DNA of 64,000 bases from Bugula neritina (taxonomy: Eukaryota > Animalia > Bryozoa). Positions 12,185 through 64,000 of the stretch are shown piece by piece (the first letter of the stretch is position 1; every line of letters starts with the position of its first letter). The notes beneath the pieces were generated by a model, which saw only the letters and a program-made list of their open reading frames with translations, did not search any database and was not told the DNA's origin. A program made the position numbers and the translations under genes. Location of the stretch: assembly GCA_964035545.1 (NCBI GenBank), contig OZ037773.1, positions 9,577,751 to 9,641,750 on the forward strand. Reading direction: 5' to 3'.

Positions 12185-13665
12185 ACTGATAAGGCAACCT
12201 AAACCTTTTTGCTATAGCATGGTGGAAGATAGACTCCAACATTTATCAATTTTTTGATACCATAAGCTATATTTCAGCTTTTTTGGTTATACTGTTTCGT
12301 TGCATGAACTTGCTGCAATCAGAGATAGTTTAATCCTACTCTTTTACTTTTGGTGATATAAAATATCTGTAACCGCTGGTATGATTAAGCTACAAAGTGT
12401 CTTTTATAAAGATGTACAATTTAAATGGTCTATATAATAATATTCTATAACATTGTTATTTCTTTATTTACCTTTATTATCATTCAAAATTTTTCCTATA
12501 TCATTTAAAATAACATACATCTTTGATTAAATTAACAGCATCCATGTTAGTAGAGCAGCTTCTGACATCATGCACATCACGGAAAAATAATATTTGATAA
12601 AATACTATAAAAAATACACTATTGCTAGTAGACCCATATATTAGCATCTATTGCTTTGAGCCATTTCAAATGATAATGTAGTAGTCGAACTAATATTATG
12701 TAGTTGTACCAAATGTATTTTTGTATAATCATACTTTGTATGTTGAACATTTTTAAACTCAGAAGTTCCCAAAAACAGTAATTTAAAAAAATTAATACCT
12801 TTTAAAGCCGCCCTATATATGAGCATGATATCACAATGTCACAATATTATGATGGCTTTTATTGTCTCAAGAAGCAAAATGGAACTTTAAATTTTTTTAC
12901 AATTTTAAAAACTCTTTCCTAATTTTAGACTAATGCTTGTGGTTATTACAGGGCAAGTTCCTAATAAAGATTCAAAAAGGGCGGTGCCAAAAGGTTTGCT
13001 AGAAGAAAAGCTTCCTAAAACTCTTCAGAAGTTGTCAAAGGAAAACCAGGCTATTTTTGAACTGGTTTTAAAGTTTGAACCAACTCACAGATTATCAGCA
13101 AAAAAGTGGCTTATTGAGTTTGAAAATTTCCAAGTAGAAAACTTAAAAGCATGAACTGATAAGGCAACTTAAACCTATTTGCTATATATAGCCTGATGGA
13201 AGATTGACTCCAACATTTCCCAATTTTCTGATAGCAAAAGCTATTTTACCTTTTTTGGTTACTGTATCTCTGTATGCATGCTGTAATCAGAGATAATTAA
13301 ATCCTACTATTTTACTTTTGGTTATATAAAATAGTAAAAAAGGCTGGTATGATTGAACTACAAAGTGTCTTTTATAAAGGGGCAATTTAAATGATCTAAA
13401 GTATTCTATAACATTGTTATTTCTCTACTTACCTCTATTATATCATTCAAAATTTTCCCTATATCTTTAATTGTAGTAAAACAACGGCATCCATCCATAT
13501 GTTAGTATAGAGTAGCTATTCTGACAACATAATGGATAAATAATATCTGATAAAATATTATAAAAATACACTTTTGCTAGTATACTCAGATCAGCATTTA
13601 GTGCTTTGAGCTATTTCAAATGATAATGTAGTAGTCGCACTAATATTATGTAGTTGTACCAAATG
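11734..13665. repeat. ~0.97-kb direct tandem duplication covering the last intron end, last exon and 3' region of the kinase
   Basis: Unit 1 is 11734-12710 and unit 2 is 12711-13665. AAATG occurs at all three boundaries. Confidence 0.9.
12952..13154 (+). CDS. Duplicated, possibly alternative, terminal exon of the ankyrin-kinase (GQVPNKDSKRAVPKGLLEEKLP...ENLKA*)
   Basis: Paralogous to 11967-12184 with the same acceptor context (GTGGTTATTACAG), the same phase and an open frame to TGA; 5 codons shorter. Confidence 0.75.
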
Positions 13666-14034
13666 AGCTATTGTAGTTTGAAACAATGCACTCGTACTTT
13701 TAAAATGCTATAAGTCTTATATCATTACAAAGTATTTTTGAGGCATTTACACACTACAATGTGAAGGTAAAAATTAATAAAATTCTTTGATGAATACAAA
13801 ACAGAGTGAAGAATTTGAAAAACTACAAAGACAGGCTTCTTGTCTATAATACTTGTTACAGCCAAAGTGAATTATGCTGAATTAACAAAAGGCTCTATTT
13901 ATAAATTCAGCAAATTCTGAAATAATCATTAATTTATATAGCCGTCTATGATTTTCCATAAAAATCATACAAAATATGTGTAGTGAGGAATCCACAACTT
14001 ATCATCTGGCAGTGATAATATATTATGGTGAAGG

Positions 14035-14250
14035 GAGCAGGCGTAGTTTAGGGGTTAGAGCGTTTGCTTAGTAAACACTAAGTTACGGGTCCACAACCCA
14101 GACAAAGGTCATTGGTGATGTTAGGAAGAGCATCTAGTCATAATTGCTCCTGTGCCTCATTTGAATAAGTCCTTAGCCAATTTAACAAAAACCCCTTCCA
14201 TCAGGAGTTTCTCACAGGGATAGCGACTATAAACCTTGCGTGAGTATAAT
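14035..14250 (+). mobile_element. tRNA-derived SINE-like element (most complete copy)
   Basis: GGCGTAGTTTAGGGGTTAGAGCG tRNA-like head, central GGAAGAGCATCTAGTCATAATTGCTC block and AT-rich tail. Related copies at ~4633, ~20414 and, reversed, ~50415. Confidence 0.6.
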
Positions 14251-16089
14251 TATGGTAATAGTAGTGGTGATAGGCTAGTGTTTAACAGCACAATATTTTG
14301 CATATCAAGAACTGTATGACTTGTTGCCTTTGTGCCAATATTTGATGAATTTACGCTAATAATATAATACGTAAGAATTGGGACATGTTCTTCAGCTAGA
14401 ATTGCTTTCAATGAGCATGTTTTTTGGGCTGGTAAGGAACTATAAGTTTCACCATGGTATTAGCATAACATACTATACTGTTACCTTCTTTATCAGGTTA
14501 TACCATAAATTATTGGCACAATATGAAATAGAAAATTGTAGACTACTAAAATAATTACTTATGAAACTAACTAACAAATTATGCAACTTATGATCTAATA
14601 TCATAGCAGTTGGTGCAAGGGCCACAGCTTCACATGCAGTGACTTGGGGGCATGTATAATATTATTATTATTGTATATTGTTTGCTGTATTAAGAGAATG
14701 TAACTCCAAATGTGCTCTATAAGACTGCATTTATTATATCTAAGCTATAGTACAATCAAACTTGCACTTAGCATTTGTAAAGGCAAAGGGAAACAATAAG
14801 AAGCATTCAGAGTTTCAATTCTACTTATAACATATTTTAGTGTTTTCATAATGTCAGCTGAGACTTTCGGAATACTTGCAGGAAAATATTCACTGCAAAG
14901 CAAAGCATTCATAGCTCATCAAATCTTGAATGCAATTTGTTTTGCCACGTTTTACACCGTATTGTGACGAAGTTGTCTGCCCCATGCCAGCACACTCTTC
15001 AATTCTCTTTAGATAGAAAACACGTTTTTATGAATCTCAGATACAAAAACATAACTATAGCAGATGTAGTGTTTGGAATTAGAATTGTAGACCAAATTTT
15101 CGATTTAGTTCAGTATTGCATTCATATTCTGAAAAAATTTGAAATAATTGTAATAAAATTGTGCTTTTATATAAAAATCTGTTACATAATACTTGAAATT
15201 GAAAATTGATTGAAACTAGTATAAAAATAGCAATTTTTTATGTTTTTTTTAATAAAAACCTCAACTTTCCACATTATTATAATATAATTTCTGCATGTAC
15301 TATTTTTATGGTATTTTAGGATACGATTTTTTTATAAATCTGTTATAGTAGATAATAGAAAAATAATTGTGCTCTATTATACGAGTGTTGTTGAAAAATA
15401 TTGGGAAAGAAGAGAAGCGTAGCAGTTATCTAAATATAAGTAGAAAACACAATTATCTGAAAAAAGATTTTTTGCTAAACACTATTTTTAAGCCTAAATA
15501 AACTACTCAATCGATTGTTAGGTTTATAAACTATATATTTATATAAAAAGATGCTTACCTATGCTTAAGAAATGCATTCGGACCAAAATTATTTAAGTTA
15601 TAGTATATATAAGCATCAAATATACATGTACATAACAAAAATGTTGCCTCAACTTTGAAAAGAATTGTTGGTGCAAATAAAATTAATGTACTGCCATTTA
15701 TATTTATAATTCTATCATTGAAATTGACAAAAAGATTGGATTGGTCAAAACCAGAGAAAATATAAGGTGTGCTATGAAGAGTTATAGCACTAAGATGCTA
15801 TAAAGTGTCAAGTTTCTAAGTCTGATAAAATAGGATTCCAAGTAAAGTGAAAAAACTTGCATGTTCATTTGCTAAGAGATTGAAGTACAAAAGCTTTAAT
15901 TATTCACTTGCTTTGGCTTCTGACAATTCACAAAGTTTTTTTGTTGAAGTATGCAATTTACTACATGATCATTGACTCCACATATTGATGTAAATTATTA
16001 TAGCATTGTTTCTATACAGGCTTTCAGAGAAAAAGCTATGATGAACAACTTGCAGCTAAACAACAGTCTTTTACGTACCTACTGATTTC

Positions 16090-16451
<362 letters not shown>

Positions 16452-17965
16452 CTACAAAATTAATTAACATGTCTAGCGTAAAATAAAAACATATTTATCA
16501 TAATCCTATGCATATAAAACTATTGGATGCAATGTGAGATTAGGGTTTAATGTCAAATGCTTGCAGGTTGCCGAAAGGTTAACACTGCTGAGATGTGTCA
16601 TATGGTTATGTATTTATGAAAAGTATTATGATACTCATACTAATAATTATTATAAACACTAATTCTTGGATATTGGCTAATGTGTAGTTACATGAAATGA
16701 CACACTAGAGTCATTCAACTTGTTGACACTTTATGTAATTCTATTTCTAGTTTATGCTGGTGCACTAGCTTAAGCTCCAACCACCACTAAGCATCCTCTC
16801 ACTAAAATCTAATCAAGTTGAAACTTGTTTTGCCACACAGACTACAGTTAACAAAGCCGCTATAATTGACAGCTGCTACAGCTACTACAGCTACTAGTAA
16901 CTCAGCAGTACATGTGAGTCATCATCAAGTGGAACTCAATAAGTATGACTAGAGCTTGCCATCTGTACAGTTATTGAGGTGAGTCAGTATTGTTATTTGT
17001 GTAGCTATAAGAATTAACTATATAATGCCAACCAATCAGCTTTCTTGTATAGCAAATATTACTAACAGTATTATGCACAGTATTGTATCATTGTATGACA
17101 GTTTATTTTCTTAAACAACATTTTAATTGCTTTTGTGCTGATTAGTAAAGAAAATATTCTAAGCATTTATAATGTATAGTTGTGAAAATTAAAAAAAACC
17201 AGCTGCCTGTTTCGCATTACTTTGTATACAGAATTTTCTCCTAGCTACTCTCTTTTATTGTGTTTTTTCTCCTTTTTATTATTATGGTGTGATTGGGTAT
17301 GTGATACTTTTCTAGAAACATTTGAGTTTAGGTTTTAGAGTATTTTTAAATTTTTTACAATTCAGCCTATTTATTTATCTTAAAATAAAAGTTCAAGAGC
17401 ACTATAAAAATTAGCATATAATTAAACTATATTACAGCATAACCAATACTCATAGTGATTTGAAAACTCAATTACTTTTTACCTCCTGCTTAAAATAAAC
17501 GTATATAATTTTGCAATGTGTAGTTTTAAGTATCAACTGCATACTTATATATAACTTTATTCCCAATTTAAAGCTTCGATATACACATATACGTGCATGT
17601 ATACAAAAAATAAATATTTTATAAATTTCTACTTTGCTATTTCTGTTTGTGAAAGCAATATTATATTATGTTGAAATTTCCAACTCTTAGCTGTTAATAT
17701 CTTTGCGTTTTGTTTATTTGTTGCAAAATGTTTTCAAAGTATTATAATATGCACTCCATATAGCGTTACTGTGGCATGCAGTGGTACCTAATAAACTGCA
17801 TTTGTGTTAAATTTACTAATTTTATCAGATTTGTGTCAAATCAAGTTTCTAACTCTTTACAATGTTCCTCAAAAAAGCAATTTCAATAAGTTTTTAAAAA
17901 TTGATATACTTATACTTACTTTATAGGCTGAATAATTTTGATTTTACTAGAAAACAAAGCAAAGA

Positions 17966-18122
17966 ATGACTCAGTACTATAAGAACTATCAAGACCGAAG
18001 GACTGTAGATTATTACAAGCAAAGTAGAGGGGCGAAGGGTTACCCAGACAGTAAAGTTGTTGATTACTACGACCAGGGTAGAGGGCTACACAAACAGAGA
18101 CATAACAAGTATGGATTCAGAG
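17966..18122 (+). CDS. Candidate first coding exon of a small Tyr/Gly/basic microprotein (MTQYYKNYQDRRTVDYYKQSRGAKGYPDSKVVDYYDQGRGLHKQRHNKYGFR...)
   Basis: Acceptor TTTTACTAG at 17950, donor AG|GTAACT after 18122, higher GC than flanks, and an internal peptide repeat VDYYxQxRG. The downstream exon is uncertain; 19001-19038 would give GIQNYYYSAQFY*. Confidence 0.55.
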
Positions 18123-20413
18123 GTAACTTTAAAATATATTTTAAGATTCGATATCTTATGTCAGTGAAGGACAGACGTATGTCAGTAATGTGACTTCATA
18201 TATATAACTAGTCAGGTACCGTAGTTTAGTATTGGTGATGCAATCTCTAGTTTGTGTAATAAACAGCATTTCTTGTCAACTGCATAAGGTGACCTGAGGT
18301 TTGATACTGAAGTAGCTTCAGGTACATTCCAAGGTTTTCCCGTTCAGGTGTGATGATATGTAGAAATTTGCAACCGTACTCTGTCACTCATTACACATGC
18401 GTGTGGAAATGTTGAAGTACCAAATCAACCGGTTTATTGTTTTCCGCAACTATAAATGAAATTCTATATATCTACAAATAAGTTATTATTCTAATTATAT
18501 GAATACTATAATTCAAGGTGTAAATTCATTTCAGAATTATTTTGCTTTTAACGTTAGTTTTTGTCTTCTCTTTTCTTTTCTATACAACACATTATTATTA
18601 GGGTTCCCCCGGTAATATATTATGGAATTTGCTTTCCATTTTTTTCCACTGTTTTCTAGCTCAGTGTGAAACTTAGAGTTATGTCCACCTATTGTAGGAT
18701 GCTAAAGCAGCAATACATCGGCCTTTCTTTTTAGTTGTTACAGTTTTTATACTTATTTTATACTTAAAGGAGAAGCCAGTTGTAGTTTTTATGATTTAAA
18801 AAATCCCGCTAACCTGTGAACTAGGAGTTTGAAGAGGTGTGGATATGTGAATTTACAGCTTTAGTGCTTGTCAGCAGTGTGGAGCTTCCCTCTGCATATG
18901 ATGCCTAAAAAGCAATATTTTGAAAACTAAACACATGACACATGCAATGGTATAAACAAAATGTCGTTATAAAGCTTTATATTTTATTTATGTTTGACAG
19001 GTATACAAAATTATTACTATAGTGCTCAATTTTATTAATATATTTTAAATGTTTTGGTTGATGCCAAAAAAGTTGACAGAAATTTATATGAACAGTTTTT
19101 TCCTTTCTAACAAAGTCTATGATTTATGCAGAAGGATAAAACATTCCTATATATAAATGTGATTTGGATGCTCCAATAGTAAACCCTGGACTTTTGTCAA
19201 GTGGGATATTCTCTTTTCACGTCACTTGGCAGCTTATACTCTGTACTATAATATATATTATACACTATATATTCTACACTGTAAACTATAATATGCACTA
19301 TATTTACTATGTATATTATATACTCTATGGTATATAGTCTATACTCAAGAATTAAGCTGTTGATTTACAGAAGTTATAAATCCTATAGCAAGTAGCATTA
19401 TGGACGATAGTAGCTTCAGACATTTATTCTAGCGTACTGCAGCATCAGATAGCCAGCTATAATATTCCTCAACCTTGCAACTCACTTCTCTGTCTCTCAA
19501 TAGCAGCCCTGCATCACACTGGTGTACCTGTAGACTAACCTCAATAACTATACAGCCCACATGTAGGTATGAGGACATAAGCTAGTCCCCAGTACAGCCA
19601 GCTATATAATCATACATTCATTTCTAGCAAGGTATTTCATCATAACCAGCACAAAATTAAACTGAACTGGTTTACTCTGTTCCATAACTCTTTGAAGTAG
19701 CTCTTGATTAAAGTGCATATACAGTACTGTATATTGTTGTCTATCCTTTGATTGTTCACAGTTGAATTTTCTTACGGGTTGGAAAAACCAAAACTTGAAT
19801 AAAATTTTATGCTGAAAAGTATGTTTGCTGTTTATTGTTTCCAACTTAAGGGATTTGATTGATTTGATTTCAATTACCCTATATGCAAATAAATAATGAG
19901 TGGACATCAGGGGGACTTTATCTCCATAATGCCTATTAGGAAACCTGACAATCTACTTATATACTAAGAGTGATGCAAAAGCTAGGAGTATTTAGGACTG
20001 TTGACTTATTTTACATTCTGCTGCGAGAGATGATAGCAGGCATTGACCTTAGTGTAGGTTTAAGAGCCCACTTATTTGATACCTCAGATGGCTATAGCAT
20101 GTGACCCATAATATTCATGGCAGTAATATCTCATAAATTATTCGTAAAGTGAAGGTGCCAAGTTACCAATTGTACCAAATCTTCACACCTGCATGGACTC
20201 TGAATATCAACTCATAAATCTATGGTTGCCAGGAATTTAGTGAATTTAAATTAGTGCTGCACCAGTTCCTTAGAGTACTGGTTACTCAGTAGAACTCACC
20301 AACTACTTCTAACTCTGTAATGCTGTAGATATAGATGTCCTAGCTTATGCATCTGTAGATATTATGTGGTTTGTGAAACTATTTATATTGCTTAGAGTTG
20401 CCTTCTAAAACCG

Positions 20414-20580
20414 GAGCGGTAATCTAAAGGTTAGAGGACTTATTAATTTAGTAAACGCAAGCTCAGTGGTACACATCTTAGTAAAGGCCATTGGCAATGT
20501 TCATATCAGGCCATAACTCCTTAGCTCTTTTTCTATCAGAAGTTCGAACAGGGATGGTGACCGTTATAGACCCACATGGG
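20414..20580 (+). mobile_element. Degenerate copy of the SINE-like element
   Basis: GGTTAGAG..TTAGTAAAC..AAAGGCCATTGG..CATAA..CAGGGATGGTGAC..TATA parallels 14035-14240. Confidence 0.45.
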
Positions 20581-23416
20581 TTTTTTAAGATTGCTTCAAA
20601 TAATGTACAATTAGTGCAACAAAATTCCTCATCTTTGATTAGATACAACAATTAATAAATATTAACTTGTCCATCTCTAATTTCATTTACCAGCTGAGCT
20701 GGTTTGATCTAGTTGATGCATAAATTCCTTTCCACTTGGTGAATCAGCATGCACTGCACGCACAGGTGAAGCACGTGTAGACTGGTGTAACCCACCATGG
20801 GTCTTGTTACATACCTACACTCTTTCCAATTCTAGTCTATAGATTGTAGCTACCACCATATATACTGGTAAAGTGATAGTAGTGGTGGCAATAGCAGTGG
20901 CAGTAGTGGTATCAGAATATCACTAGTATCAGTAGTATCACTAGTATAATAGCCATGTAGTAAAAGTATCATTAGCAGTAGTATAGTATCAGTATCAGTT
21001 ATAGTAGTAGCAGTAGCAACGTTAAAAGCAGTAAAATAGTTGTAACAATATCAACTATGCGATAAGACTAATAAACAAATAAATACAATTTTTACTCAGC
21101 ATGGCCAAAACTTCACTAGGATTTCTGATGATCCTAAAATATAAACTAAAGTTTTTTAAAGGAAATATACACATACAGGTATGCAGATGTGTGCTAAGAA
21201 AATATGCTTACATAACCTCAAAAATAGTTTAGTATAAATAAACTTACCTATACATAAAATTAGCATGCTTTAATTTATTGCAATCTAAAGTACGGCATAG
21301 TTATTATATAGTATATTAGTATAATTATATAACATTTTTTGCATTAAATCATTTGCCTAAACTCAAGAGCCAAGGCTGAGTGCAGAATGCATCGTTCATT
21401 CTACCTAAAAAAATTACGTTATATGAGTTTATAGCTACTATAGGTTATTCTAGAAGTTTTGACGCAGGTGTAGATCTCCAGCCACATTATCTAATTTTAT
21501 CACAAGTGACTGCGTTGTTTACAGCAATAGGAATTATTATTTAACAAAGACTCAGAACTTCTTATTTTCTGAAAGTTCGCAGAAAAACACACTTATGAAA
21601 CATCAATAATGTCACGGAACACTTGTTATACGCTGTCAGGTTGCTAAAGGCTATATGAAATGCCGTGACATGTGACATTCAGCAAATGCCAATATATTAT
21701 TTAGCTATGTGGTAAGGAAGTTGTACAAAAGTTGACAATAAATCGTTTTTAGCAGTGATTTGCAAATAAGAAAATTTGTTTTAATAACACATTGGCAATC
21801 CATTCCGTTTGGGACTTTGCATATGATTAGTGTATTATACTGATGCATACACTGATGTGCAATTAAAGAATCGAAGGCAGTGGATAGTGAGCAGTGAATA
21901 GTGCAAAGTCAATAGTTGCTTAACAAATAGTGCATATTAGCTGGTGATAAGTATATCTTAAAATTGAAAAAACATATTATAGTTGAATTAAAGAAATATC
22001 TCCTAGATTCATTATAAACACTTGCTGTATTGTAAAAGTGCTTGCAGTGTCATAATAACAAATCCAATTGAACTCGTTTCAAATAATACTGGGTGTATCT
22101 GCATTTGCAAAAGGAATACAAAAGCAACTATATTATGGTATTTGGCTGGTGCTAAAATAATTATAAAGAAGGTAGAACTTAAAATTTTTTGAGTTTATTT
22201 TCAGAACATTGTATAAAAGCTATAATACTCTTTAAAGACTTCGAAGACAAATTAAATTGGTTGCGCTGTGAAAAATGTTTTTAAACTTACAGATGGTTCT
22301 CAATATCAAAGCCACTTCTTATCTCGTTTTATGCCTAGAAATTCAGTCTTCAGGCCAAATGCTGATATCTCACTAATTGACCAGTCAGCTTGAATCTAAA
22401 AAATATCTTCAAGTAAAGTTTTACAGGTATACACAACTGCTATTATTAACAGTAATTGGAATATAAATATAGGTCAATTAGCCGTAGCTGATAAAGAATA
22501 GCTATTCATATGTCAACTCAGCAACTATGCATGGGAAAGACGCATCTGTGACAATATAGCCATTAGTAGTTTAAACTTTAGCAATGTTGTGCATTCAATG
22601 AACAAAAACGTAATAACAATACAGATGTTGAATCTTTGCATTTTACTTAAACTAGCTTCGAGTTTCATTCGAAGTAAATATGTACCCAAGAATGTTGTGC
22701 TTCAACGACCAGCATCTTCTAGTTAGCGACTGTACGAGAATCACTCTAATTGGTCAATACGTACATTCCACACTGCAATGAGTTCTAAGGGTTAGTACAG
22801 TCAAAAGCAAGCTGTGCCTCTCACATAAGAAGAGGTATCACGGATAGTGAGAACGTCTTAACACACTTATAACCATCTGTGAGTGTCAACAAGCATTTGT
22901 GTCTACTTGAACCAATATTAGCTCAAGCTGCTTCAAGATTTGATCACTATTAAAGGTGAGTAGACTAAACAGCAAGCTGTTGGGAATATTTCTCCTGCAC
23001 GCTTTTTTATAATAGACCCATTTTAATTGGTTTTTGATAACGAGTGCTCATCCAGTTGTGCGAAGTTACACACAGGTATAGTTCGTCTTTACACACAATT
23101 CAATATCAACTGTGGGTTTGTCAACAATAACAGTTTTCCAATAGTCTGAAAAAGTGCTACTTTGCTGTCTACAAAAGTTTTCAACACCGCAGGCTGGTTG
23201 TATAATAGAGCTAGACTAAGGTTATTGCACTAATTGAACGTTTGTACCAGCATCTGTGACGGCACACTCCCGGCTTTTGGTGTCACATGTTTCATGTGAG
23301 ACTGAGTAATAACTCGAAATCTCGTATTACCATTAGCGGCACAGCATACACTGTTTAACTCGGCACTACTCTACATTGTATAAAGTGAAAAGTCAGAAAG
23401 AAAAGATAGACATTGA

Positions 23417-24340
23417 ATGGGAAGGGTGTTTAAAATCCCACCAGAAATGGAGTTAATATACGATAAAGACAGTGACTACGAAGCTTACTGCAAACAGCTG
23501 TCTGACGACAAAGATTTGGCCGTGGAGCCGCCATCTTTTGCTCAGAGAGCCAAGAAATGGGAAATTTCTTTATCAAATACCAGACAGATAAACGATGCTT
23601 TTTATGGTAAGGCAAATGTTGTTGCTGGGTAGAGTTTGTGTCCAAAATTGCTGCAAAACATATGGCATCTTATATACACAATATTTACAGGGTGATAGCA
23701 CGAAAGCCCCGTATTTGTGTCTTATATAGTTAGGTTCTGAGTGTCTAACTTAGGTTTTCATTTATTATGAATTCAGATATCTTAAATTCAATAATTTTCA
23801 TTTGTGTTAAAAGATCATTGGGTTTAATTATAGCAGACTTACACACTTGTGCATTACTTACCCATGTCTGAAACTTACACATGTTTTAACCTCCGCTTAT
23901 ATGCACCCTGTGTATACACGTCTGCCAAATTAGCTACGACTAACACTAAAGTAGTAACTCCTGTGGCATCTTGGGTACAAAAACTTGCTGGAATGTGATG
24001 AAGATGTTTATCTGTGATCACTGCTACATTTTAAATCATGTAAAAGTAGATATCATGACTTTGTTATATAACTTGATCTGTATAAATTTGGTATTTTACT
24101 GCTAGCCTTTGCCGTATTGTTGGAATTGTATATTAGGTTTAACCTGCCCCAATTCTTCACAGATATACAGACTTTTTCTGGTTTTGTTTCATGAAGGAAC
24201 TATTCTCAATAAGACTAGGATTAAGTTGTTTCAACATACATAGAATTGGCAAATTTATGCAAGCTAGGATGAAGTTATTAAGGTCAAACCACATGTCTTT
24301 AATCTTTATTTATTTGACAGGAAAATATAAGTTCTGGTGA
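23417..24340 (+). CDS. Candidate 69-aa microprotein (MGRVFKIPPEMELIYDKDSDYEAYCKQLSDDKDLAVEPPSFAQRAKKWEISLSNTRQINDAFYGKYKFW)
   Basis: Exon 23417-23606 ends at a strong donor TATG|GTAAGG. A phase-1 acceptor TTTATTTATTTGACAG gives exon 24321-24340 ending in TGA. Protein-like composition. Confidence 0.55.
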
Positions 24341-53627: not shown

Positions 53628-54447
53628 ACTGTCAGCAATAATGGCTTCCCTTATCGATAAACTGTCAGTGACTATCGATAGAATAGCAGACATAAGTTTA
53701 CTATTTTCAGTTAATTGGTTTCCTTAATTTTTATTTTTGTTAATGAAATGTAGCAAAAAGCATATACATTTGATGATTATAGTACTTAGAGTTGTCTATA
53801 CATGGCGGGTTAGTTCCATGTGGCTTAGTTTTGGTTACAAATCACTCATAGTCTTGTAGATTTTTTTTATTTTGAGAACTATTTGAACAAATAAATTACT
53901 CTTTTAGGATTCTATATAAATAAATGTTTGTTTATTCCAGACATATATATCTATTATTACAGACAACATGGTTATATAATTTTAGGCTATCCATAGAACA
54001 ACAAAAAGGGAGCCAAGAAATTTAAGAACAATTTTTTTTTTTAATTTAATCCATATTCAAGAACAACATAAAATTTATATAATGCATATAACAGTTCAAT
54101 GATATATTTCATAGATATTAGAAGCTTCCATATCCTTGCATTCATTTAGCTGTCACAACAAACAAGTTGAATAAGGTATGACTACACATCACTAGGAAAT
54201 ACCACAAAGTATATAAACCAACCAATCAGAATTTTTGTATTTTGAAGTTTCGCAAAAGGTTATAGTGCCTGCCTTTCTTAAACAAAAGCATTTGAATGGA
54301 CAGAAATGATGAAGAACCATGACAGTTGAAATAAAATGATTACAGTTAGATCTTTTTAGATAATGAATTGATATAGAAAGCAGTGATATTTAGTTAGAAT
54401 AAATTGCTTGGATACCATATCTAGATTTTCATCAACAGCAAGACGGA

Positions 54448-56443
54448 TCAGCAGGTTGAAGGGTGGCCAGAGCAAGTCTCTACTGACTCCACACGTAGCT
54501 CTTCTATGAAAATGTGGAAGGAAGAATAATACCCAGTCTGCACTGTAGAGTAGCCATATTGGTTCTCAACTGCATACGATATTTCCTTTGCCCCGGACAG
54601 TAGGCCGTGACATATTCCACTCACTAAAAGTACTTTACAGTTACAAAACAAACTTTGACCTTTGAAACATCTAATCGTACAGTGAACCATAATTAGCTAA
54701 ATTGAGTAGAGATCAAGATGCTATGGTATAGAGTTGCTAAGAAACTGTTGAATGGTTAACATATGAATACAACTCTAGCAACAAAGTAACTGCTTCGGTC
54801 CAGTAAATAGTGTAGTACAAATAGAGTTTTCTTCTGTTTTGTCAAAATATAACACAGTCAAAGAAACCAGATTCGATTCTTCTGTTACCTTGCATGGGGT
54901 GGTGATAAGCCGTAGTATGATCAAAGTGATTCGTTCCTTCTATTTTGCCAGGAGATGGACAATCTTGTCTATTAATTTTAAAGTACCTGCAACAGTAATG
55001 TATCGTTACCACTCAGGTTAAAATAGATTGAAAGATTTAGTAATGATTTTGCCAATATAACATACCCAAAAATAGTATTTGACTATATGAGATGCAACTA
55101 ATTTATATAAATTATTTCATTTAACTCATTAATATGTTTAATTTATTAGCCCACCATGATGTCTAGAAAACTAGCCATTAAAAATAAAATAATCATTCAA
55201 AAAATCAATTAAGTATACATTGATTATTACTATTATTGACATCTAGTTTGTGAAACTATTAGCAAACCAATGAATCATGTTTCAGGGTAACTTTCATGAA
55301 AATAATGACAACTAAAACAAACCATCTGACTGAAGATGCAGGTGACACCGTACTCTCTCTAGTCACGTGATTGCCGCTTGCTGTTAGCCTCAATGCCGTG
55401 TCGGAGTGATATTTGTTGTAGGTGAAGGTCATTATGTCACCTAAATTTATATCGAAGTTGGCTTTCCACCAGTGATATCTTGTCAAATAACCACTGTGTG
55501 TTCTGTACAGCTGACTACCAACTCTAACTATAATATACAATAACGTTAAGATGAATGCATCTCTCCTTCTAGATCTTTCTATTTACATTCTGACTGCTGA
55601 AATTCAAGTCTATACAATACAAGGCATTTGTCAATTAAAATATTTGTTACGAGCAAAAATTTCTTTCTGACAAAATGCATCAAATAAATTGTAAGGTTCA
55701 TGCACATAACATTATCATATGTTAAATATTATAATTATAGTGAGTATACATGAAAACCTGCAAGGCTATATTAAGAGCATTGCACAATGATATAAAACAA
55801 CAATAATGAGTCCTATAAAAACAACATTTAAATAAAGAAAACTGCCAGAGCCGGGTATGAGCATTTCTAGATAAACTAATGAGGTATTAATACAAGGAAT
55901 TATTTAAAGAACTCTTTAAAATAAACCTCCATCTACAGCCTGCTTCAGTCTGACTTCCTCAATGTGGAGGTTGGACACAGAACTTAGTCCCCCGGTTAGT
56001 ATTGGAGTCGGTTGAAATCCAGCGACGTCCGTACACTGGCCAATTTTCACACTCAGAGAATGAACACCAGCTTCTAATACATTGTCGCAAATCCCTTCAG
56101 CTGAAACCAGAAGTAAACTAGCTGGGATGAAAGGTCAACAAAGAAACATCAAATTTATTCATCTCTTACAGGCAATTTGTCATGGCTATTGAAACTTTTG
56201 TCAAATTTGGTTTTAATGTAAAAATTATATTATTTTTAGGCATCTATATTATACAATAAATTTTCAGCTTTAAATAGTTAGTTTTAGCTTTTTTGAAACA
56301 AATTATACTGTATATGAACAAATATAATCATTAGTATATTATGATGATTGTTTAATAAATTATTAGCTTTTAATCAACTATGTGGCCATTAATTTAAACA
56401 AGGGGGAAAAATTGAAAATAACTAATTTTTATTTCTAAGTAGC

Positions 56444-56480
<37 letters not shown>

Positions 56481-58481
56481 TTAAATTACAAACCTATATA
56501 TAATTATGTTTGCTGCATTTATTTCAGATCTATATTAATTTCTGTAGAAAAGCACTAACCTGTTCTCACTCTCCCGTGATCTTTCCAGTAGCTGTAGCGA
56601 TTGGTGGATAAATGAGAGATGATGTAATCTAGCTGAGGGTTACATTCCATGTCATCTATTGTAATGTACCTGACAGCAATGCGGACACAATCTCAGTGAT
56701 TAAATCAAATAATCAAAAATGTGTTGCCAAAACCTGCATTTCCCAGAATGCATTATGATTAGTTTTGTGTTAGAAAAACCGCATTTCAGCCATTTATCAG
56801 AGCACAAAATTTGTGTAGTAAAACATAATCAATTATTAAACATCTCTGTGTTTCAAATAATTATATGCTTGTTTTTCTTACCTTTAACAATAAATATGTC
56901 GAAAAATTATCTATTGTGTTACAATAAAACAAAGAATATTTTATGTGAATGCCACACATCTAAATATATGGAATTGTCCCACTAAATACGCAGCTAATGA
57001 TAGGAAGTTGTTTCCTTTAAATAGAAGTTGTAATGTGTTTGTGTTGCAAACAATGTAGCTAAATATATTATAAGTAGCTGATAACCGGTTTATAAAGCTA
57101 AATAATTATAACAGGAAATGTATGACATCAGAGCTATAGTAGCTAGTAGCTAATAGCTAGTAGCTAGAGCTATTAACAGCACAAAACTGCCAATATCCAA
57201 CTCCTTACATACTGCCTGGTGGGTTACTCACCATCGAGCACAGTGTAAGCTGTTAGAGGACTTAAGGCTGATCGATGTCAAGGCACTGAATTTGATTCGC
57301 AAACTGCTGTCATCAGCCATCTTTTCAAATGTAACAGTCTAAGAATTGAAACAGGTGTCATGTAATGTGTACATTATATGTTTTATAAATTAGACATTTA
57401 TTAAGAGATATTCAATGTATTAGGTTATAGGTAATATGAAATAGCTATGTGTTGTATAATAAGCAGTAATATATAATATTATTTATTTTGCAATAATTTT
57501 GTATGATGCAATAATGAAATTATTGGTGTAATATAATCATATTTATGCATTATTTATTAAATATATTTAATGTAAATGATATACTTAATGTAAATGATAT
57601 ACTTAATGTAAATGATATTCCTAATGTAATTGCTATGTAATTAGTATGTAATTTAATCCTTGGAAATAGTAAAGGAAATAGAAATGTATAAAATGGACCA
57701 GTAAGTCAGCGTAAGAAAGTCTCTAAACTCAGTGAGTTACAAACTTCAAGTATAGAAGGGTAGATAACTTCTTAGTCAAGATTGTATGCATAACAAGCCT
57801 CTTTATAGTTTGCTGTATAAACAAATCAATTTGATAGCAATACTAATTGGAAGTGACTTGCAAATGTGCAATTAACACTAAAATAGTTTCATGTATTTTT
57901 ATTTCTTAAAGTCAATAACTACGTGATGCTAAGTGAGTAGATCTTTATAGTTTCGATCAGAAAGATTTGAGATGTTGTCACAAATTATGACAATAATACT
58001 TTGATAGTAATATTACCCTGACAGCTGTATGATATTATTACCTTGACAGTGCGATATTACCTTGAAATTGATACTACCTTGATAGCTAGTATGATATTAC
58101 CTTGACAGTATGATATTACCTTGACATTGATACTACCTTGACATTGATATTACCTTGACATTGATACTACCTTGATAGCTAGTATGATATTACCTTGACA
58201 GTGCGATATTACCTTGACATTGATATTACCTTGACATTGATACTACCTTGATAGCTAGTATGATATTACCTTGGCGGTGTTATATTACCTTCAGAGTGAC
58301 GTTAGTCAGAGACAAATCTTCGCTGCCAGCAATTAGCTCTGTCCAAGTGTAGTACTGGTAGTTAAATACATTCAGCAGAGGACAAGGCTTTGCCAAACCA
58401 GCTGCAATATGTGCTTTATATGAACAAATATTGTACCTGCATAGTCTGAGCTGTGCTTTATTTCCAGTATATATTTTAGCC

Positions 58482-58526
<45 letters not shown>

Positions 58527-61500
58527 ACGTATGTCACATCACTAACACATATGTAATGTGTCACATGACTAACATGCATGTCACATGACTAGCATATATG
58601 TCACATGACTTGCGCATGCGTAATATGTCACATGATTACCACATATATGTAACATGACTAGCCTATATGTCACATGACTAACTAAGGTGACAGATTTGTT
58701 CTTGCATTGTATAGGCAGTGACTATAGTAGTATTGTATTGTGTATAGATTCTATAGTAGTATTGTATATTGCTAAGATGAAAACAATTGAAATACTTTCA
58801 AGACGTTGAGATGTGACTTCCATAAGCAGCATGGTTCTGGCGTACCTCCAGCCAGTTAGAGTAGGGGAGGTTGAGTAACCTGAACAATGACCAACCACAA
58901 CGTCAACCTCTATGTTCCCCGCCTCCAGACCATAACAGGTTCCGTCAACTAAATCAACAGAGGGGGATAACTTACAACCAAGCTTCAAAACCAGTTCTAT
59001 ATAGAATGTAAAACTATGGCAACAATATATTATTGATGTCTGATTTGAGCCTTTTAATTATTTTCTTGTGAATCAGTTCAGGTTCTGCTATAATAGACTA
59101 TATCAGCGCCCAATACGTAGTATGCCAGTATTATTAATCAAATGCATAGCTTAGCTAATAACTATAAATAATAGTAATAAACATATTGAATCCACATGCT
59201 TCGTGATGAGGTTGTCATTTTCACTGATGGAGTCTCTATATATCAGGTCATATATTGCAAAAACCTGTTAAGATTGTAATAAATATATCACTATTTTATT
59301 TAAACCATTTGGGCAGTTACATAAGTGATCTAGTGTTTATATTTAATGTGCTTTTCAAAATGCATGAGTTACTTTAGCACATCATGAGTCCAACTGCTGC
59401 TAATGAAACCTTTATGGCAACAGACATTACAACTTCTAGTCTATTTGTGGTAGAGTTAGAGTCTTTAATTCTTCAATGAGAATAAAGTGCTTGTGTATTT
59501 GTAGGAGGTTAATTAATTTATATAGATATACTTTTCAACTTAGAAAAACTCTAGTCATGAGATATTGTTGCAGCTAAGAAGTTCATTCATAACTCAACTA
59601 TATATACAAGCATTTTTCTTACTGTCAATACTCCGGTAGAGTCTTCCGGTGTCGGCAGTATAATCCAGAAACTCAATAGATGCAGGGTCAGAGCAACTGT
59701 GACCATCAAAGGTCAAGTACCACCTGTAGCACCCTGCATAGCCGAGGTGGGCGCCAACCACCATGTGTAGAGTTACTCTTAGTCCCGAGTCGTTGGATCT
59801 TTTGGGATACGTCAAACTCTAAACACATGTATTTGTAACTTTACTAATTTTATCTTTTCCAGTTTACTAGCAAATCTATGGGCATATTATAACTAATGCT
59901 GATAAATGTCGAAGTATGGCAAAAACACTGTTTGCTGTAAAAGTTGGTAACAAGAATATTATCACAAATTGATCACTAGAGTAAAGTTTCGTTTATACCT
60001 CTGCTATAAAACAATGAAAGTGAACATTTGAAATTGAGAAATAACAAGATGGTGTACTGCAGCTACTAAAAATTAGAATATTATTTAATTTAATTGTTTT
60101 AGGCTATTTTTTATTCAAGAAAAAATATGATTTACTGCTTACAACTATATGAGTCATGAATTACCAAATAACGTCTGACGAGTATTTGAATTTGAAAAAC
60201 TTACCATAACCTTGCCTGAGTTGGTGGTGTCTGCCAAACTGGCCCAGTAATGTCTCAGATTCTGGTACTCTTGGAGAGCGTCACATTCACTTCTACCATG
60301 TTCAGCTAAATATTATACTTATAAGTAGGCCATGATATTTGCTTATAGTTTGATTCATGTCAGCTAAATATAGTATACAGAGAGTGACATGATATGTCTT
60401 TAGTCATTGGTTCATGTTTAGCTAAATTAAGATTATATGATTTATCTACTAAGTTTGGTTTATGTAACAATAGAGCGCATACAAACAGAATATACGAAGT
60501 AGAAAAAATTTGGGGGGTACGAAGCAACAGTCCTGTTGCTAGTCAGCAGAAATGAATGAAAAGATTAAAGAAAAACAGAAATTACCTGCAAGATATGTTT
60601 TAGATTCAGCATAAAACATGAAGTTAACCGTCCAGACACTAATTGTGGGAAACTCACCAACACAAACTGGAGAAGTTAGTTCTTCTTCCATTGAACCTTT
60701 GAAACAGACTTCCTGCTCACTGCATTCCTTTCCGTCACAGTTGTCATGCTATATATTAAGATAAAATATTTGCTATTGCTAGTCTACTATAATAACTAGT
60801 CTGTATATTGGAAGGTGTTCAGATATAGTCATTGGTATTAAAAAAGCTAAAAATGAAGTGAACGTTACATTGTTAATTATATAAAGCTTAGATATATATA
60901 ACTCAAATAGCTTTATTTTATGAAACATGGATGTATATAGATTAAAAAACTGCTATTTAAAATAAGTTGTAAGGTATAATATACTAAGCTAGTTATTTTG
61001 TTTGTAACTTAGTTGAAATACAACAGAAATCCTGTGATGCAACAATTATTTGGTAGATTTCTTTCAATTTTATGGATGTTTGCTCAAAATTTTACAATGC
61101 AGCTTAAAATAAAATCACAAATTAAATATGCTTTTATGCATGAGTTTGCTATAACATTTTAGTTGGTAGAAATATTTAGATATATTTAAATTAGTTTCAA
61201 AGTTTGGTCTGGGTAGGAAACCCTCCTCAAAGTAAAGCAATATCCTGAGGATACAGACTTAGAACTCAAACCTGGCCTGACGTAAAGTACTCAATCAAAT
61301 CTCCTGTTACAAGAAACTCAGTCTCAGAGTCAGAGTCAGTCTCAGAGTCAGGTTTGTGAGGCATAATCTCGTAGCATTTTCCTAAAAGTATTCAGTATTA
61401 TTTTACAACTATAGGCTATAATAAAATACGTATAATATGTATATAATATTAGACAGCTGTTGTGGTTGACAAGACAAGTGGTGTTTCAGCTCTATCTATA

Positions 61501-63719
61501 CATGCATCAACGTTTCATAGTGTTTTCTTAAGAAAAATCCTTAGCTAAAAGATTTTTAATCATAATATTAATTACGTGCACCTCTAAAAGATGCATTCTG
61601 TATATAGTGTTATTTGGGATGTTATAGTCGTGAAGTAGTTTACAATTTATATTCGCTTAGCATAATTAGTAAATTAATAAACTTATAATGCGTTTGTAGG
61701 ATATAAAATAATTGTCTTTCTTATTTGAAATGATAAATAAATGTTTACGGAAAAATACATATCACATGGCTGTGATGTAAGTTATTATAATGAATAAACT
61801 CATAATGAAATGACGTTGATGCAAAACTCTTGCATTTGTCGAAAGTCAATTCACCAAAAATCAAAAGCGATAAGTCACTTTAATGGCTACCAAAAGATGT
61901 GAATTGATTTTTTAAAATTAGTCTTTTATAAGCTGCAAAAATTGTATAATCATTAGTTGACAATTCTCTTGAAGTGTATGGATTAAAAATGCTTATATAA
62001 CTCTAATGTATTGAGTAACTCTGAATAATTTATAAGATAAAAACTTAATGATAAGACTCCAAATAAAGTGACATGTTTGTAACTCTATTTAACATTGATT
62101 TTTGAGAAATGTAAGTATTTATTGTATCTTGTATTCTTAGCATTTGGCTGTTGGTGTTTCAATAGAAACTATTGACAAGTTTAGCATATATACGTAAAAG
62201 CTGCGTAATTGTTAAGTTTTAAACAAACTCTATCATGGTAATATAAGATGCCCCACAAGCTAATGGCATAATTTGTACTGTATATCCTGTTTCTATAATC
62301 TTATCAATCCACATATAGTAATAAAAGTTAAAATAAACTTTTAATTTGAATCATTTTATAGGGTTTAATAATGAGTTTTAAATTTTATTCAACAACAATA
62401 GAATTCACAAAACTGTAATAATGTAAAACCATGATATAGAGATAAATTAATTAAAAAAATAAAATAGCATAAACCTTTCAAATTCCTCATAGTTAAAATA
62501 ACGTCAAAAGGAAATTTTGTCTATTGTTATATATATATTACAAATTATTGGTTGCTTTATCTCAAATAATGAGGTTTCCAAATACTATAATAAATGAGCC
62601 ATGCGGGTAAATGCTAAAATTATACAATTAAACTGCCAGCAACGCAAAACACATAAAAGTCATCTATAAAAGCTAATTAAGTATTGATTATATAATTATT
62701 TTAAAACTGTTTAATTTGTATATTTCTAATATTTTTGCATTTAAAAACTGTTTTAAAAAATTAGAAACCATGCAACTGCTTTTTATGAGGTTGACCTGCA
62801 GAAAAATTAATTTATATCTGACTACTTTTTGCAGCAAAAAACCTACAAATTTTTGCTAATTTCTGCAAGTTTATTATATATATTATACAAGTATATAAAC
62901 GTATTGCGACTTTTATTACTATAATGTATTCTGCTTTACTATTATTTCTGAAACTAATATAACGAAAAGCTCTATACGTACCCCATTGATCTTTTATAGC
63001 TCTACTGCACTCCAAAGATGACCTCCGACAGTTAACAGCACACTCAACCAAACTTCTAGTGGTAGAGATCTTGTTAACAGCAGACGTAGCGATAGTTAGA
63101 CTAATGTCCTTAGTCACATGACCAGTTTTAAGTTCGGGTAAATCTACCAATATTACAATATACTTGTAACACGTACAGCCCAATTTATTAGTTTTTTGTC
63201 AAAAAATTTATATTTGTAAATATCAAAGGATTAGAATGAAATGCACCAAATGCACAAATATAACTAATTATATAACGAAACTATATGTTCTATAATATAA
63301 ACAGTGATTATAAATTAGAGCCAATAATTTTCTATGCAATATATATGGATAATAACACAAGAAAACTACATTGTACAGTATAATTGATGCTGACGTAGAT
63401 CAGGTTTTTCCTAAAAATTGACAAACGACTTTGAGTATCTTATATTATAAATTTAACACTTGATAATAGTCATACAATAATTATTGCTAATTTAATCAAA
63501 CATTTAAAAAAAAATAGTTAGTTCCTATAACTGAATGTTTTGTTGTGGCTTTTACTACTTTAAAAGCATTATAATCCTTACAAGATGTTAATGTTATATT
63601 ATAAGAAACAATTATATACAGTAATTATTTTTTGTTATGACATACTTACACTGAATACTTTCAGCTGCTTCAATTCTTGGAAATACCAAGAAAATAACAT
63701 GGAAAACCAACACCAGCAT
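54448..63719 (-). CDS. Secreted protein: signal peptide + PAN/apple-like + follistatin-N-like + 3 x CTHRC1 C-terminal domains (~621 aa, 14 exons)
   Basis: Exons (minus) 63719-63650, 63143-62982, 61381-61272, 60748-60658, 60305-60205, 59818-59623, 58948-58796, 58401-58289, 57338-57232, 56669-56560, 56100-55927, 55527-55323, 54986-54889, 54623-54448; phase-consistent (1866 nt). Signal peptide MLVLVFHVIFLVFPRIEA; RSLVECAVNC..C..KCY; CDGKECSEQEVC..PVCV. Three copies of T[YF]xK..[DS]..LR....RWY[LIF]x[FI][DN]..C....G.C......TG......E, resembling the CTHRC1 C-domain. Confidence 0.85.
58008..58290. repeat. ~17-22-bp minisatellite whose unit (minus strand CAAG|GTARTATC) copies the adjacent 5' splice site, ~14 copies
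   Basis: The true donor CTGAAG|GTAATAT at 58289/58288 is followed in the intron by repeated TGTCAAGGTAATATC and ATCAAGGTAGTATC. Confidence 0.9.
58486..58682. repeat. (TA)n followed by a TGTCACATGACTA-containing minisatellite
   Basis: Direct inspection; another (TA)n lies at 56447-56476. Confidence 0.85.
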
Positions 63720-64000
63720 TGTTGCATTAGTTTATGGTGAGGTTCTGCAAAAATCTAATAAACATAAGGAATTAGGCTTCATTTAAATATCAGAAAAGTA
63801 TTGATTTTGAGAAATTTCCTATGTAGTTGCAACATGGGAAGACAATTCTTAACTGATTAATTTGCATAACATTATGAGTAGTTATATTAAATAGTTAAAA
63901 TGGAAGGCAGGCAATAAAGGAAGTTGATTCTTTGACACTGACGTTTGTTTAAACCTTTGGTTTGTCTAAAGTATCCATTATACTTGTGATGATCTCTGGT

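What the first reader, a model, noticed from the sequence alone, without database searches (positions are those of the whole stretch)
54448..63719. Collagen-less secreted protein with three tandem CTHRC1 C-terminal domains plus PAN- and follistatin-N-like modules
Seen: a 14-exon ORF with a signal peptide, a PAN/apple-like segment (RSLVECAVNC), a follistatin-N-like Cys motif and three diverged domains, each with the RWY.[FI]..C, G.C and TG..E pattern. There is no Gly-X-Y run. Known: canonical CTHRC1 has one such domain after a short collagen helix that trimerises it, and it acts in Wnt/PCP signalling and matrix remodelling. Inference: three domains on one chain could form a single-chain, asymmetric pseudo-trimer head that no longer needs the collagen helix. 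I do not recognise this architecture.
Basis: partly seen in the sequence, partly recalled or inferred. Interest (0 to 1): 0.85.

Follow-up and report, generated by a model that had tools for sequence, protein, structure and literature searches.

The report
Single-chain triple CTHRC1-head secreted protein
This is a real 14-exon gene of a bryozoan-type genome for a secreted protein that has no collagen stalk but carries three different CTHRC1 head domains on one chain, which structure prediction on two relatives packs into a C1q-like three-part head; it is one of about 35 such genes here and the same design exists, uncharacterised, in a brachiopod.

Summary
I rebuilt the minus-strand gene on my own: 14 GT-AG exons from 63719 to 54448, giving 621 aa. 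It has a signal peptide, a PAN/apple-like module, a small Cys knot and three full CTHRC1_C domains. There is no Gly-X-Y run. Paralogues moved four exon borders, which lie at the two inter-domain junctions.

No RNA run exists, so the single-transcript claim rests on comparison. Eight paralogous loci keep open frames and phase-1 donors and acceptors at both inter-domain junctions. Neither D2 nor D3 has a start or signal exon of its own.

The architecture is not unique:
- about 33-36 paralogues lie in tandem clusters in this genome, and the scan's first readers noted the family in five other windows of this contig;
- a Bugula neritina GenBank contig has it, annotated incompletely as "CTHRC1";
- at least four Lingula anatina RefSeq "uncharacterized" proteins have it;
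- one 611-aa uninterrupted ORF sits on a public contig.

Verdict: a new variant of a known kind, of moderate interest.

The parts
63650..63719 (-). Exon 1: ATG and hydrophobic signal peptide (MLVLVFHVIFLVFPRIEAAESIQ), phase-1 donor GTAAGT
   Evidence: Paralogues have signal-peptide exons with phase-1 donors in the same position.
62982..63143 (-). Exon 2: first part of the PAN/apple-like module (…RSLVECAVNCRRSSLECSRAIKDQW)
   Evidence: The own genome holds 21 paralogous exons. hhalign against the PAN region of the Lingula relatives gives 89.9% probability, E 1.7e-6. Pfam on this exon alone finds no PAN.
61272..61381 (-). Exon 3: rest of the PAN/apple-like module (fourth Cys, KCYEI…) and an acidic linker
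   Evidence: Frame and GT-AG sites. A counterpart is seen in paralogue L001.
60658..60748 (-). It has 4 Cys here and 5 in the paralogues.
   Evidence: The own genome holds 20 paralogous exons. Alignment A7. No FOLN or EGF Pfam hit beyond a weak Pvs28 EGF match at E 0.005.
60205..60305 (-). Exon 5: start of CTHRC1_C domain 1
59623..59818 (-). Exon 6: core of domain 1 (…CYRWYLTFDGHSC…)
   Evidence: Pfam PF25815 E 2.6e-7, 31.4 bits. Profile A1 of this exon finds the family in the public protein library.
58796..58948 (-). Exon 7: end of domain 1 plus the first half of the D1-D2 linker; phase-1 donor AAA|GTATTT
   Evidence: Pfam E 3e-7. The donor was placed by comparing 8 paralogues.
58289..58401 (-). 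Exon 8: second half of the D1-D2 linker and the start of domain 2 (…PCPLLNVFNYQYYTW…); phase-1 acceptor TTGCAG|
   Evidence: Its donor AAG|GTAATA is the first unit of the minisatellite at 58036-58291.
57232..57338 (-). Exon 9: domain 2 (…SLRIKFSALTS…HCAR-W)
56560..56669 (-). Exon 10: domain 2 (WYITIDDMEC…)
55927..56100 (-). Exon 11: end of domain 2 plus the first half of the D2-D3 linker (…HIEEVRLKQAVDG); phase-1 donor GAG|GTTTAT
   Evidence: Pfam E 0.022. The 'AVDG|GT' donor is conserved in 8 paralogues and in B. neritina. The genome holds 34 such exons.
55323..55527 (-). Exon 12: second half of the D2-D3 linker and the first half of domain 3. Phase-1 acceptor TATTATAG|; an alternative AG lies 6 nt downstream at 55521.
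   Evidence: Pfam E 2.2e-5. The acceptor position and phase are conserved in 8 paralogues. With 55527 the linker is 22 aa, the same length as I counted in Lingula P0005.
54889..54986 (-). Exon 13: domain 3 (WYFKINRQDCPSPGKIEG…)
54448..54623 (-). Exon 14: end of domain 3, the C-terminal tail …EELRVESVETCSGHPSTC, and the stop codon
   Evidence: Pfam E 0.02. The genome holds 36 such terminal exons.

Best explanation
The locus is one gene for a secreted protein of about 621 aa. Its order is signal peptide, PAN/apple-like domain, small Cys knot, then three diverged CTHRC1_C domains (23-27% identical to each other) joined by linkers of about 19 and 22 residues.

Proposed mechanism:
- Each CTHRC1_C domain is a C1q/TNF-type jelly roll.
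- The three fold back on one another around a pseudo-threefold axis. This gives a covalently linked, asymmetric 'heterotrimer' head.
- That head is the equivalent of the homotrimeric head that the collagen stalk assembles in canonical CTHRC1, so the stalk is no longer needed.
- The PAN/apple domain adds a second binding module.

The gene belongs to a lophophorate family. It is present in the brachiopod Lingula and in bugulid bryozoans, and here it has grown to about 35 tandem paralogues. The triplication predates that expansion.

The most likely role is a soluble extracellular recognition or bridging protein that binds glycans, microbial surfaces or matrix and cell-surface ligands, like invertebrate C1q-domain proteins.

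Shown here: the gene model, the domain content, the family and its conservation, and purifying selection on the domains in three close paralogues.
Predicted for relatives only: the pseudo-trimeric packing.
Inferred: that this copy folds the same way, that it is expressed, and its ligand and role.
For: Gene model: 14 GT-AG exons give an intact 1,866-nt ORF.

Domains:
- Three CTHRC1_C domains by Pfam on exon pieces and by a local HMM on the spliced protein, at 101, 65 and 68 bits.
- No Gly-X-Y run.

One transcript:
- Seven loci of the same genome and two B. neritina genes share the same exon order.
- Both inter-domain junctions keep an open frame and phase-1 donor and acceptor in all 8 copies compared. 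The linker motif EEVR…AVDG is conserved.
- Signal-peptide exons occur only upstream of the PAN exon.
- Ka/Ks is 0.08-0.31 for D2 and D3 between three close paralogues.

Family:
- The genome holds at least 117 CTHRC1_C exon hits, 21 PAN exons, 20 knot exons, 34 D2-end exons and 36 D3-end exons.
- D1, D2 and D3 are each monophyletic across the bryozoan copies, with SH-aLRT support of 98, 99 and 100.

Relatives:
- Lingula XP_013395411.1 (603 aa) aligns end to end with this protein at E 1e-42. Pfam gives it PAN_1 plus three CTHRC1_C domains.
- A 611-aa uninterrupted ORF lies on a 2.6-kb public contig.

Structure:
- AlphaFold2 of two relatives gives pLDDT 82 and 80, pTM 0.75 and 0.78.

Functional analogy: the bivalve protein HcC1qDC6 has three tandem gC1q domains, and each binds bacteria, LPS and peptidoglycan (PMC5519582).
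Against: - No RNA run holds this locus, so splicing and expression are unverified.
- The structure was predicted for relatives about 27% identical to this protein, with shallow alignments for D1 and D2. AlphaFold has seen C1q/TNF trimers in training.
- A three-chain complex test with controls gave no verdict.
- D3 of this copy has lost two conserved cysteines and the conserved Trp of the TGW motif. The knot has also lost one Cys. This copy may therefore be drifting.
- PAN is not detected by Pfam in the window's own exons.
- The ligand and biological role rest only on analogy.
Confidence: 0.7

Rival explanations
1. One gene, but the three CTHRC1_C domains are independent beads, or each pairs with domains of other chains (domain-swapped oligomers). 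There is then no intramolecular pseudo-trimer.
For: No experimental structure of any CTHRC1_C domain turned up in the PDB by sequence search. The complex test with the domains as separate chains gave no verdict. The alignments used for D1 and D2 were shallow.
Confidence: 0.12
2. One reading: a PAN-plus-D1 gene followed by separate single-domain CTHRC1_C genes.
For: Reading through the first plausible donor after D2 reaches a stop after 12 codons, which looks like a natural C-terminus. There are no RNA data. The B. neritina GenBank model KAF6026444.1 joins only D1 and D3.
Against: The exons that begin D2 and D3 have no in-frame ATG and no signal-peptide exon upstream. The sequence after 'EE' is conserved and ends in a phase-1 donor, matched by a phase-1 acceptor, in 8 of 8 paralogues. 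Full-length three-domain proteins exist in Lingula and as one uninterrupted ORF.
Confidence: 0.05
3. This particular copy is a decaying or silent paralogue, a young pseudogene, in a large tandem family.
For: D3 has lost both cysteines of a conserved pair and the Trp of TGW. The knot has lost one Cys, and the PAN exon lacks the N-terminal Cys that several paralogues have. No expression data exist. A minisatellite of donor-like units abuts exon 8.
Against: All 14 exons are open, with canonical splice sites and no frameshift over 1,866 nt. The two D3 cysteines are lost together, as expected for orderly loss of one disulfide rather than random decay (inference). All three domains still match a family HMM over nearly their full length.
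Confidence: 0.1
4. Same structure, but the role is developmental signalling like vertebrate CTHRC1 (a Wnt/PCP co-factor or TGF-beta/BMP modulator), not recognition or adhesion.
For: Homology of the head domain to CTHRC1. The vertebrate roles are summarised in PMC7058181.
Against: About 35 rapidly diverging tandem paralogues at 46-59% identity, together with an added PAN/apple module, fit a diversified binding repertoire better than a conserved signalling ligand. This is inference; nothing was tested.
Confidence: 0.15

Closest known systems
Canonical CTHRC1 / Cthrc1 family (vertebrates, cnidarians; Leclere et al. 2020, PMC7058181)
   Same: It is secreted and has the same C-terminal domain family (Pfam PF25815), which that paper modelled as a C1q-like jelly roll that trimerises.
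   Different: The canonical protein has one head domain behind a short collagen Gly-X-Y helix that trimerises three chains. This protein has no collagen, three diverged heads on one chain, and an added PAN/apple domain and Cys knot. It fails the paper's own definition (CTHR plus C-terminal domain).
Lingula anatina RefSeq 'uncharacterized' proteins
   Same: Same order end to end: signal peptide, PAN_1, Cys knot, three CTHRC1_C domains. The D2-D3 linker EE(V/T)RL…AV is conserved. BLASTP gives E 1e-42 over aa 28-604.
   Different: Only about 27-31% identical. Lingula has a handful of copies found here, against about 35 in this genome. Lingula lacks the C-terminal …TCSxxPxxC tail. I found no description in any paper beyond a footnote on collagen-less forms.
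Bugula neritina KAF6026444.1 'CTHRC1' and its locus (VXIV02002276.1)
   Same: The locus holds two tandem genes with the same exon order, and the same D3 tail (…CSGRPVTCS).
   Different: The deposited 321-aa model skips the PAN part and all of D2. It is about 32% identical to this protein, so it is a paralogue rather than the orthologue.
Bivalve C1qDC proteins with three tandem gC1q domains (HcC1qDC6, PMC5519582)
   Same: Secreted, no collagen stalk, three C1q-superfamily heads on one chain, and membership of a tandemly expanded invertebrate family. Each domain binds bacteria, LPS and peptidoglycan.
   Different: Those domains are bona fide gC1q. None of the relatives scanned here hit that Pfam family at E <= 0.01. 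They have no PAN domain. The resemblance is an analogy or very distant homology, not membership.
Engineered single-chain trimers of the C1q/TNF superfamily (PDB 5hkj/5hzf scC1q, 4dou sc-adiponectin, 4zch scAPRIL-BAFF-BAFF, 5kca Cbln1)
   Different: They are man-made fusions with designed linkers and 6-9% sequence identity to the models. Here the linkage is natural and old, and the three units have diverged.

Membership tests
Cthrc1 sensu Leclere et al. 2020 (CTHR + Cthrc1 C-terminal domain) | N-terminal signal peptide | tested here: inconclusive
   The sequence shows a hydrophobic N-terminus, MLVLVFHVIFLVFPRIEA. Paralogues have equivalent exons. No signal-peptide predictor was available.
Cthrc1 sensu Leclere et al. 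2020 (CTHR + Cthrc1 C-terminal domain) | Short collagen triple-helix (Gly-X-Y) repeat before the head | tested here: not met
   No run of 4 or more G-X-Y in any frame of 54000-64000 and none in the protein. No Collagen Pfam hit in the Lingula relatives.
Cthrc1 sensu Leclere et al. 2020 (CTHR + Cthrc1 C-terminal domain) | One C-terminal Cthrc1 domain | tested here: not met
   Three domains are present, not one.
Pfam PF25815 CTHRC1_C domain family | Match above the curated cut-off (27 bits) | tested here: met
   The exon pieces of D1 score 31.4 and 31.3 bits. The D3 piece scores 25.2 and the D2 piece 15.5, as fragments only. The spliced protein could not be sent to Pfam. A local HMM of 77 family members gives 101, 65 and 68 bits. 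Collinear Lingula relatives score 249-260 bits with 3 stretches.
C1q/TNF-superfamily trimeric head (structural class) | Jelly-roll protomers packed around a threefold axis | tested here: inconclusive
gC1q domain family (bivalve C1qDC proteins) | Pfam C1q domain match | tested here: not met
   No C1q family hit at E <= 0.01 in nine relatives or at E <= 10 in the window's exon pieces.
PAN/apple domain (Pfam PF00024 PAN_1) | Profile match and the Cys pattern of the PAN core | tested here: inconclusive
   The window's exon 2 alone gives no hit; the module is split by an intron. Indirect support:
- hhalign of the bryozoan exon-2 profile against the Lingula region gives 89.9%, E 1.7e-6.
- Lingula relatives pass the PAN_1 cut-off at 21.7-25.8 bits against 21.4.
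- The protein has four Cys spaced C-x3-C-x6-C-x10-C.
Follistatin-N-terminal-like domain (FOLN) | Profile match | tested here: not met
   No FOLN hit in the window's exon, in 7 paralogous exons or in 4 relatives at E <= 1. The only hit is a weak Pvs28 EGF match at E 0.005.

The most novel reading that the evidence does not exclude
Lophophorates (bryozoans, brachiopods, perhaps phoronids) have a natural single-chain heterotrimeric C1q-like head built from three CTHRC1_C domains and fused to a PAN/apple domain. In bugulid bryozoans it has diversified into about 35 tandem genes. These would serve as a soluble recognition repertoire for microbes, symbionts or self/non-self at colony contacts. This would be a CTHRC1-based counterpart of the bivalve C1qDC expansion, and it would change the view of CTHRC1 from a conserved signalling ligand to an ancient recognition module.
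Probability: 0.3. Interest if true: 0.7.

Novelty: new variant of a known kind. Interest (0 to 1): 0.55.

Why it matters
- The head of CTHRC1 has no solved structure that a sequence search of the PDB could find. How it trimerises has only been modelled. A natural protein that carries the whole three-part head on one chain would be a monomeric, expressible form in which to solve it. Because the three faces differ, it could also show which face binds what.
- The only family-wide study of CTHRC1 (PMC7058181) counted genes with a collagen stalk. It gave 31 genes in a coral as the maximum, listed bryozoans only by one EST, and put collagen-less lophophorate forms in a footnote. About 35 three-domain genes, roughly 100 head domains, in a 216-Mb genome change that picture.
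- The result shows the collagen stalk can be replaced by covalent linkage. Multi-domain chains also arose independently in a sponge protein and in an unnamed metagenome protein.
- For annotators: the B. neritina GenBank model of a family member is incomplete.

Tried and rejected
- RNA evidence: the one run that holds the locus covers the introns too and is not recorded as RNA.
- The window's own spliced protein could not be handed to Pfam, AlphaFold or the word-based protein search. It has no reference, and I did not type long sequences. Relatives were used instead.
- Complex prediction with Lingula D1, D2 and D3 as three chains gave no verdict. It scored 0.42 against 0.00 for swapped partners, but 0.45 when chain 2 was swapped. 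It is not used as evidence either way.
- The search for homologous proteins with the B. neritina protein found only itself. With Lingula P0005 it found only Lingula and unnamed MetaClust relatives.
- Alignment A6, which mixed full proteins with exon fragments to reach bryozoan full-length models, came out too gappy to use as a profile and was dropped.
- The apparent 'single-exon full domain' at G000:C5:8442583-8442918 was an artefact of an open intron frame.
- The top short hits of the library search (P0001-P0003, P0015, P0165 and others) are genomic exon ORFs that read into introns, not transcripts.
- My first splice choices directly after '…ME' and '…EE' were replaced after paralogue comparison.
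- The follistatin-N label was rejected.
- Literature searches for the accessions, and for CTHRC1 with Bugula or bryozoan, found no description.
- The species was not settled. B. neritina intron repeats match this genome at 94-100%, but the best match of a 3.1-kb gene stretch is only 80%.
Full report
WHAT IS THERE

The window is AT-rich eukaryotic DNA with about 30-35% G+C. It lies at G000:C9:9577751-9641750 of a 216-Mb assembly in 321 contigs.

The result has 14 exons, all introns GT-AG, and an intact 1,866-nt ORF of 621 aa. Pfam PF25815 (CTHRC1_C) hits exon pieces belonging to three separate domains:
- D1: E 2.6e-7 and 3e-7, both above the 27-bit cut-off;
- D3: 2.2e-5 and 0.02;
- D2: 0.022.

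An HMM I built from 77 single-domain family members finds three near-full-length domains in the spliced protein, at aa 159-296, 307-459 and 479-611, scoring 101, 65 and 68 bits. There is no Gly-X-Y run in any frame. The three domains are only 23-27% identical to each other.

ONE GENE OR THREE?

No RNA run holds this locus, so I used comparison. In the same genome:
- the PAN-like exon has 21 copies and the Cys-knot exon 20 copies;
- the D2-terminal exon has 34 copies and the D3-terminal exon 36 copies;
- all of these lie in the clusters where the at least 117 CTHRC1_C exon hits lie: C9 5.3, 7.6-7.7 and 9.1-10.4 Mb, C5 8.1-8.5 Mb, C3 18.8 and 26.06-26.13 Mb, and C6 5.88 Mb.

Seven fetched loci on three contigs show the same collinear exon series as the window.

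Aligning the junction regions of 8 copies corrected my first model. After the '…ME' of D1 and the '…EE' of D2 the frame stays open for 8-10 more codons. The motif EEVR…AVDG is conserved. The extension ends in a phase-1 donor at the same place in every copy, and the following exon starts at a conserved phase-1 acceptor. This gives exon borders at 58796/58401 and 55927/55527.

The exons that open D2 and D3 have no in-frame ATG. Signal-peptide exons with phase-1 donors are found only upstream of the PAN exon. Between three close paralogues, Ka/Ks for D2 and D3 is 0.18-0.31. Every module border except the one between the PAN module and the knot (phase 0) is phase 1, so D2 (exons 8-11) is a 1-1 cassette.

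THE FAMILY OUTSIDE THIS GENOME

A profile of exon 6 searched against 1.84 billion representative proteins gave 290 hits at E <= 1e-3. Several hits had 2-4 matched stretches. Pfam and the source names show the following:
- Lingula anatina XP_013395411.1 (603 aa, 'uncharacterized protein LOC106162620') and at least three further Lingula proteins of 594-637 aa carry three CTHRC1_C domains. Most of them also carry PAN_1 above its cut-off.
- P0006 (611 aa) has the same architecture. It is an uninterrupted 1,836-nt ORF on a 2.6-kb Logan contig of run SRR32924703.
- The only named bryozoan hit is 'CTHRC1 [Bugula neritina]' KAF6026444.1 (321 aa).

My protein aligns with the Lingula protein from aa 28 to 604 (27% identity, E 1e-42). 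The B. neritina contig holds two tandem genes with the full exon order. The deposited model skips the PAN part and D2.

Repeats in that contig's introns match this genome at 94-100%, but the best match of a 3.1-kb gene stretch is 80%. The genome is therefore a Bugula-group bryozoan. I could not settle whether it is B. neritina itself.

A domain tree puts all bryozoan D1s together, all D2s together and all D3s together (SH-aLRT 98, 99, 100). The triplication is therefore older than the expansion. The three domains of the unnamed metagenome protein P0125 group with each other. The four domains of an Oscarella protein that also has collagen and FN2 fall in one weakly supported group with single-domain proteins. 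Both point to independent multiplications.

STRUCTURE

The spliced window protein cannot be passed by reference, so I folded two relatives that are 32% identical to each other.
- Lingula P0005: mean pLDDT 82.4, pTM 0.75.
- P0006: mean pLDDT 79.7, pTM 0.78.

By my count from the sequences, the linker lengths are close: about 19 and 22 residues here against about 15 and 22 in the Lingula protein. A three-chain complex test gave no verdict and is not used.

WHAT IS NOT SUPPORTED

- The 'follistatin-N-like' label finds no profile support. The segment is a conserved small Cys knot.
- This copy differs from its paralogues. D3 lacks the Cys before 'RW', the Cys of 'GxC' and the Trp of 'TGW'. The knot lacks one Cys. 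The two D3 cysteines are lost together, which fits orderly loss of one disulfide, but decay of this copy cannot be excluded.

HOW IT MOST LIKELY WORKS

Shown: a secreted-type, multi-module protein from a conserved, selected and expanded family.

Predicted for relatives: the three heads form one compact C1q-like pseudo-trimer, so covalent linkage does the job of the collagen stalk.

Inferred: the asymmetric head and the PAN module act as binding surfaces. The tandem expansion at 46-59% identity points to a diversified extracellular recognition or bridging role. The analogy is the bivalve three-gC1q protein HcC1qDC6, whose domains each bind bacteria, LPS and peptidoglycan (PMC5519582). A CTHRC1-like signalling role remains possible.

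NOVELTY

I found no paper that describes this architecture. Leclere et al. 2020 define Cthrc1 as collagen plus C-terminal domain, give 31 genes (a coral) as the maximum, and list Bryozoa by one EST. [quoted passage not shown] The sequences are public but uncharacterised or mis-modelled. The scan's first readers flagged the same family in five other windows of this contig, and their positions agree with my paralogue map.

I rate it a new variant of a known kind. It is moderately interesting, mainly as a natural single-chain form of the CTHRC1 head and as a large unrecognised expansion.

Noticed in passing
window 58036-58291 (intron 8, directly after exon 8): A minisatellite of about 12 units of 17 nt. 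On the gene's strand each unit contains AAGGTAATA, the same sequence as exon 8's own 5' splice site, and the array starts at that donor. Reading past the first donor meets a TAA at once, so only the first donor keeps the frame.
   Followed up: partly
L011 (B. neritina VXIV02002276.1) 6851-16006 and 17645-24005: Two tandem genes with the full PAN, knot, D1, D2, D3 exon order. The deposited protein KAF6026444.1 (321 aa, 'CTHRC1') joins D1 directly to D3 and omits the PAN part. This is either an annotation error or a D2-skipped isoform, which the phase 1-1 cassette would allow.
   Followed up: partly
G000 repeats, e.g. C6:2612365-2612855 and C2:21281271-21281758, versus L011:11779-12258: An intronic repeat of the B. 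neritina locus occurs at many sites of this genome at 94-100% identity. The best match of the gene stretch itself is only 80% (G000:C9:10208098-10211226). Either the repeats are young shared transposons or the 80% match is a paralogue. This is unexplained.
   Followed up: partly
P0008 (Oscarella pearsei transcriptome, 784 aa), P0019 (1400 aa), P0125 (904 aa): Other multi-CTHRC1_C architectures exist. One is signal peptide, collagen, four CTHRC1_C domains and FN2 in a sponge. Another is three CTHRC1_C domains with laminin-G, FN2, PAN and pentraxin. A third is an independently triplicated three-domain protein from a metagenome.
   Followed up: partly
A second lectin-type gene therefore sits next to this one. 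I did not examine it.
   Followed up: no
L010 (G000:C9:9641751-9651750) about 489-3780, plus strand: Just beyond the window's end, upstream of this gene's 5' end and on the opposite strand, there are ORFs with RING- and B-box-like Cys/His patterns followed by a 220-aa open frame. It may be a TRIM-like gene. I judged this by eye only.
   Followed up: no
L001 versus L002 (G000:C5 8.44 and 8.11 Mb): Between these two close paralogues Ks differs by domain: D1 0.10, D3 0.25, D2 0.39. Ka/Ks for D1 is 0.73. This suggests gene conversion or relaxed or diversifying change in D1. The counts are small.
   Followed up: no
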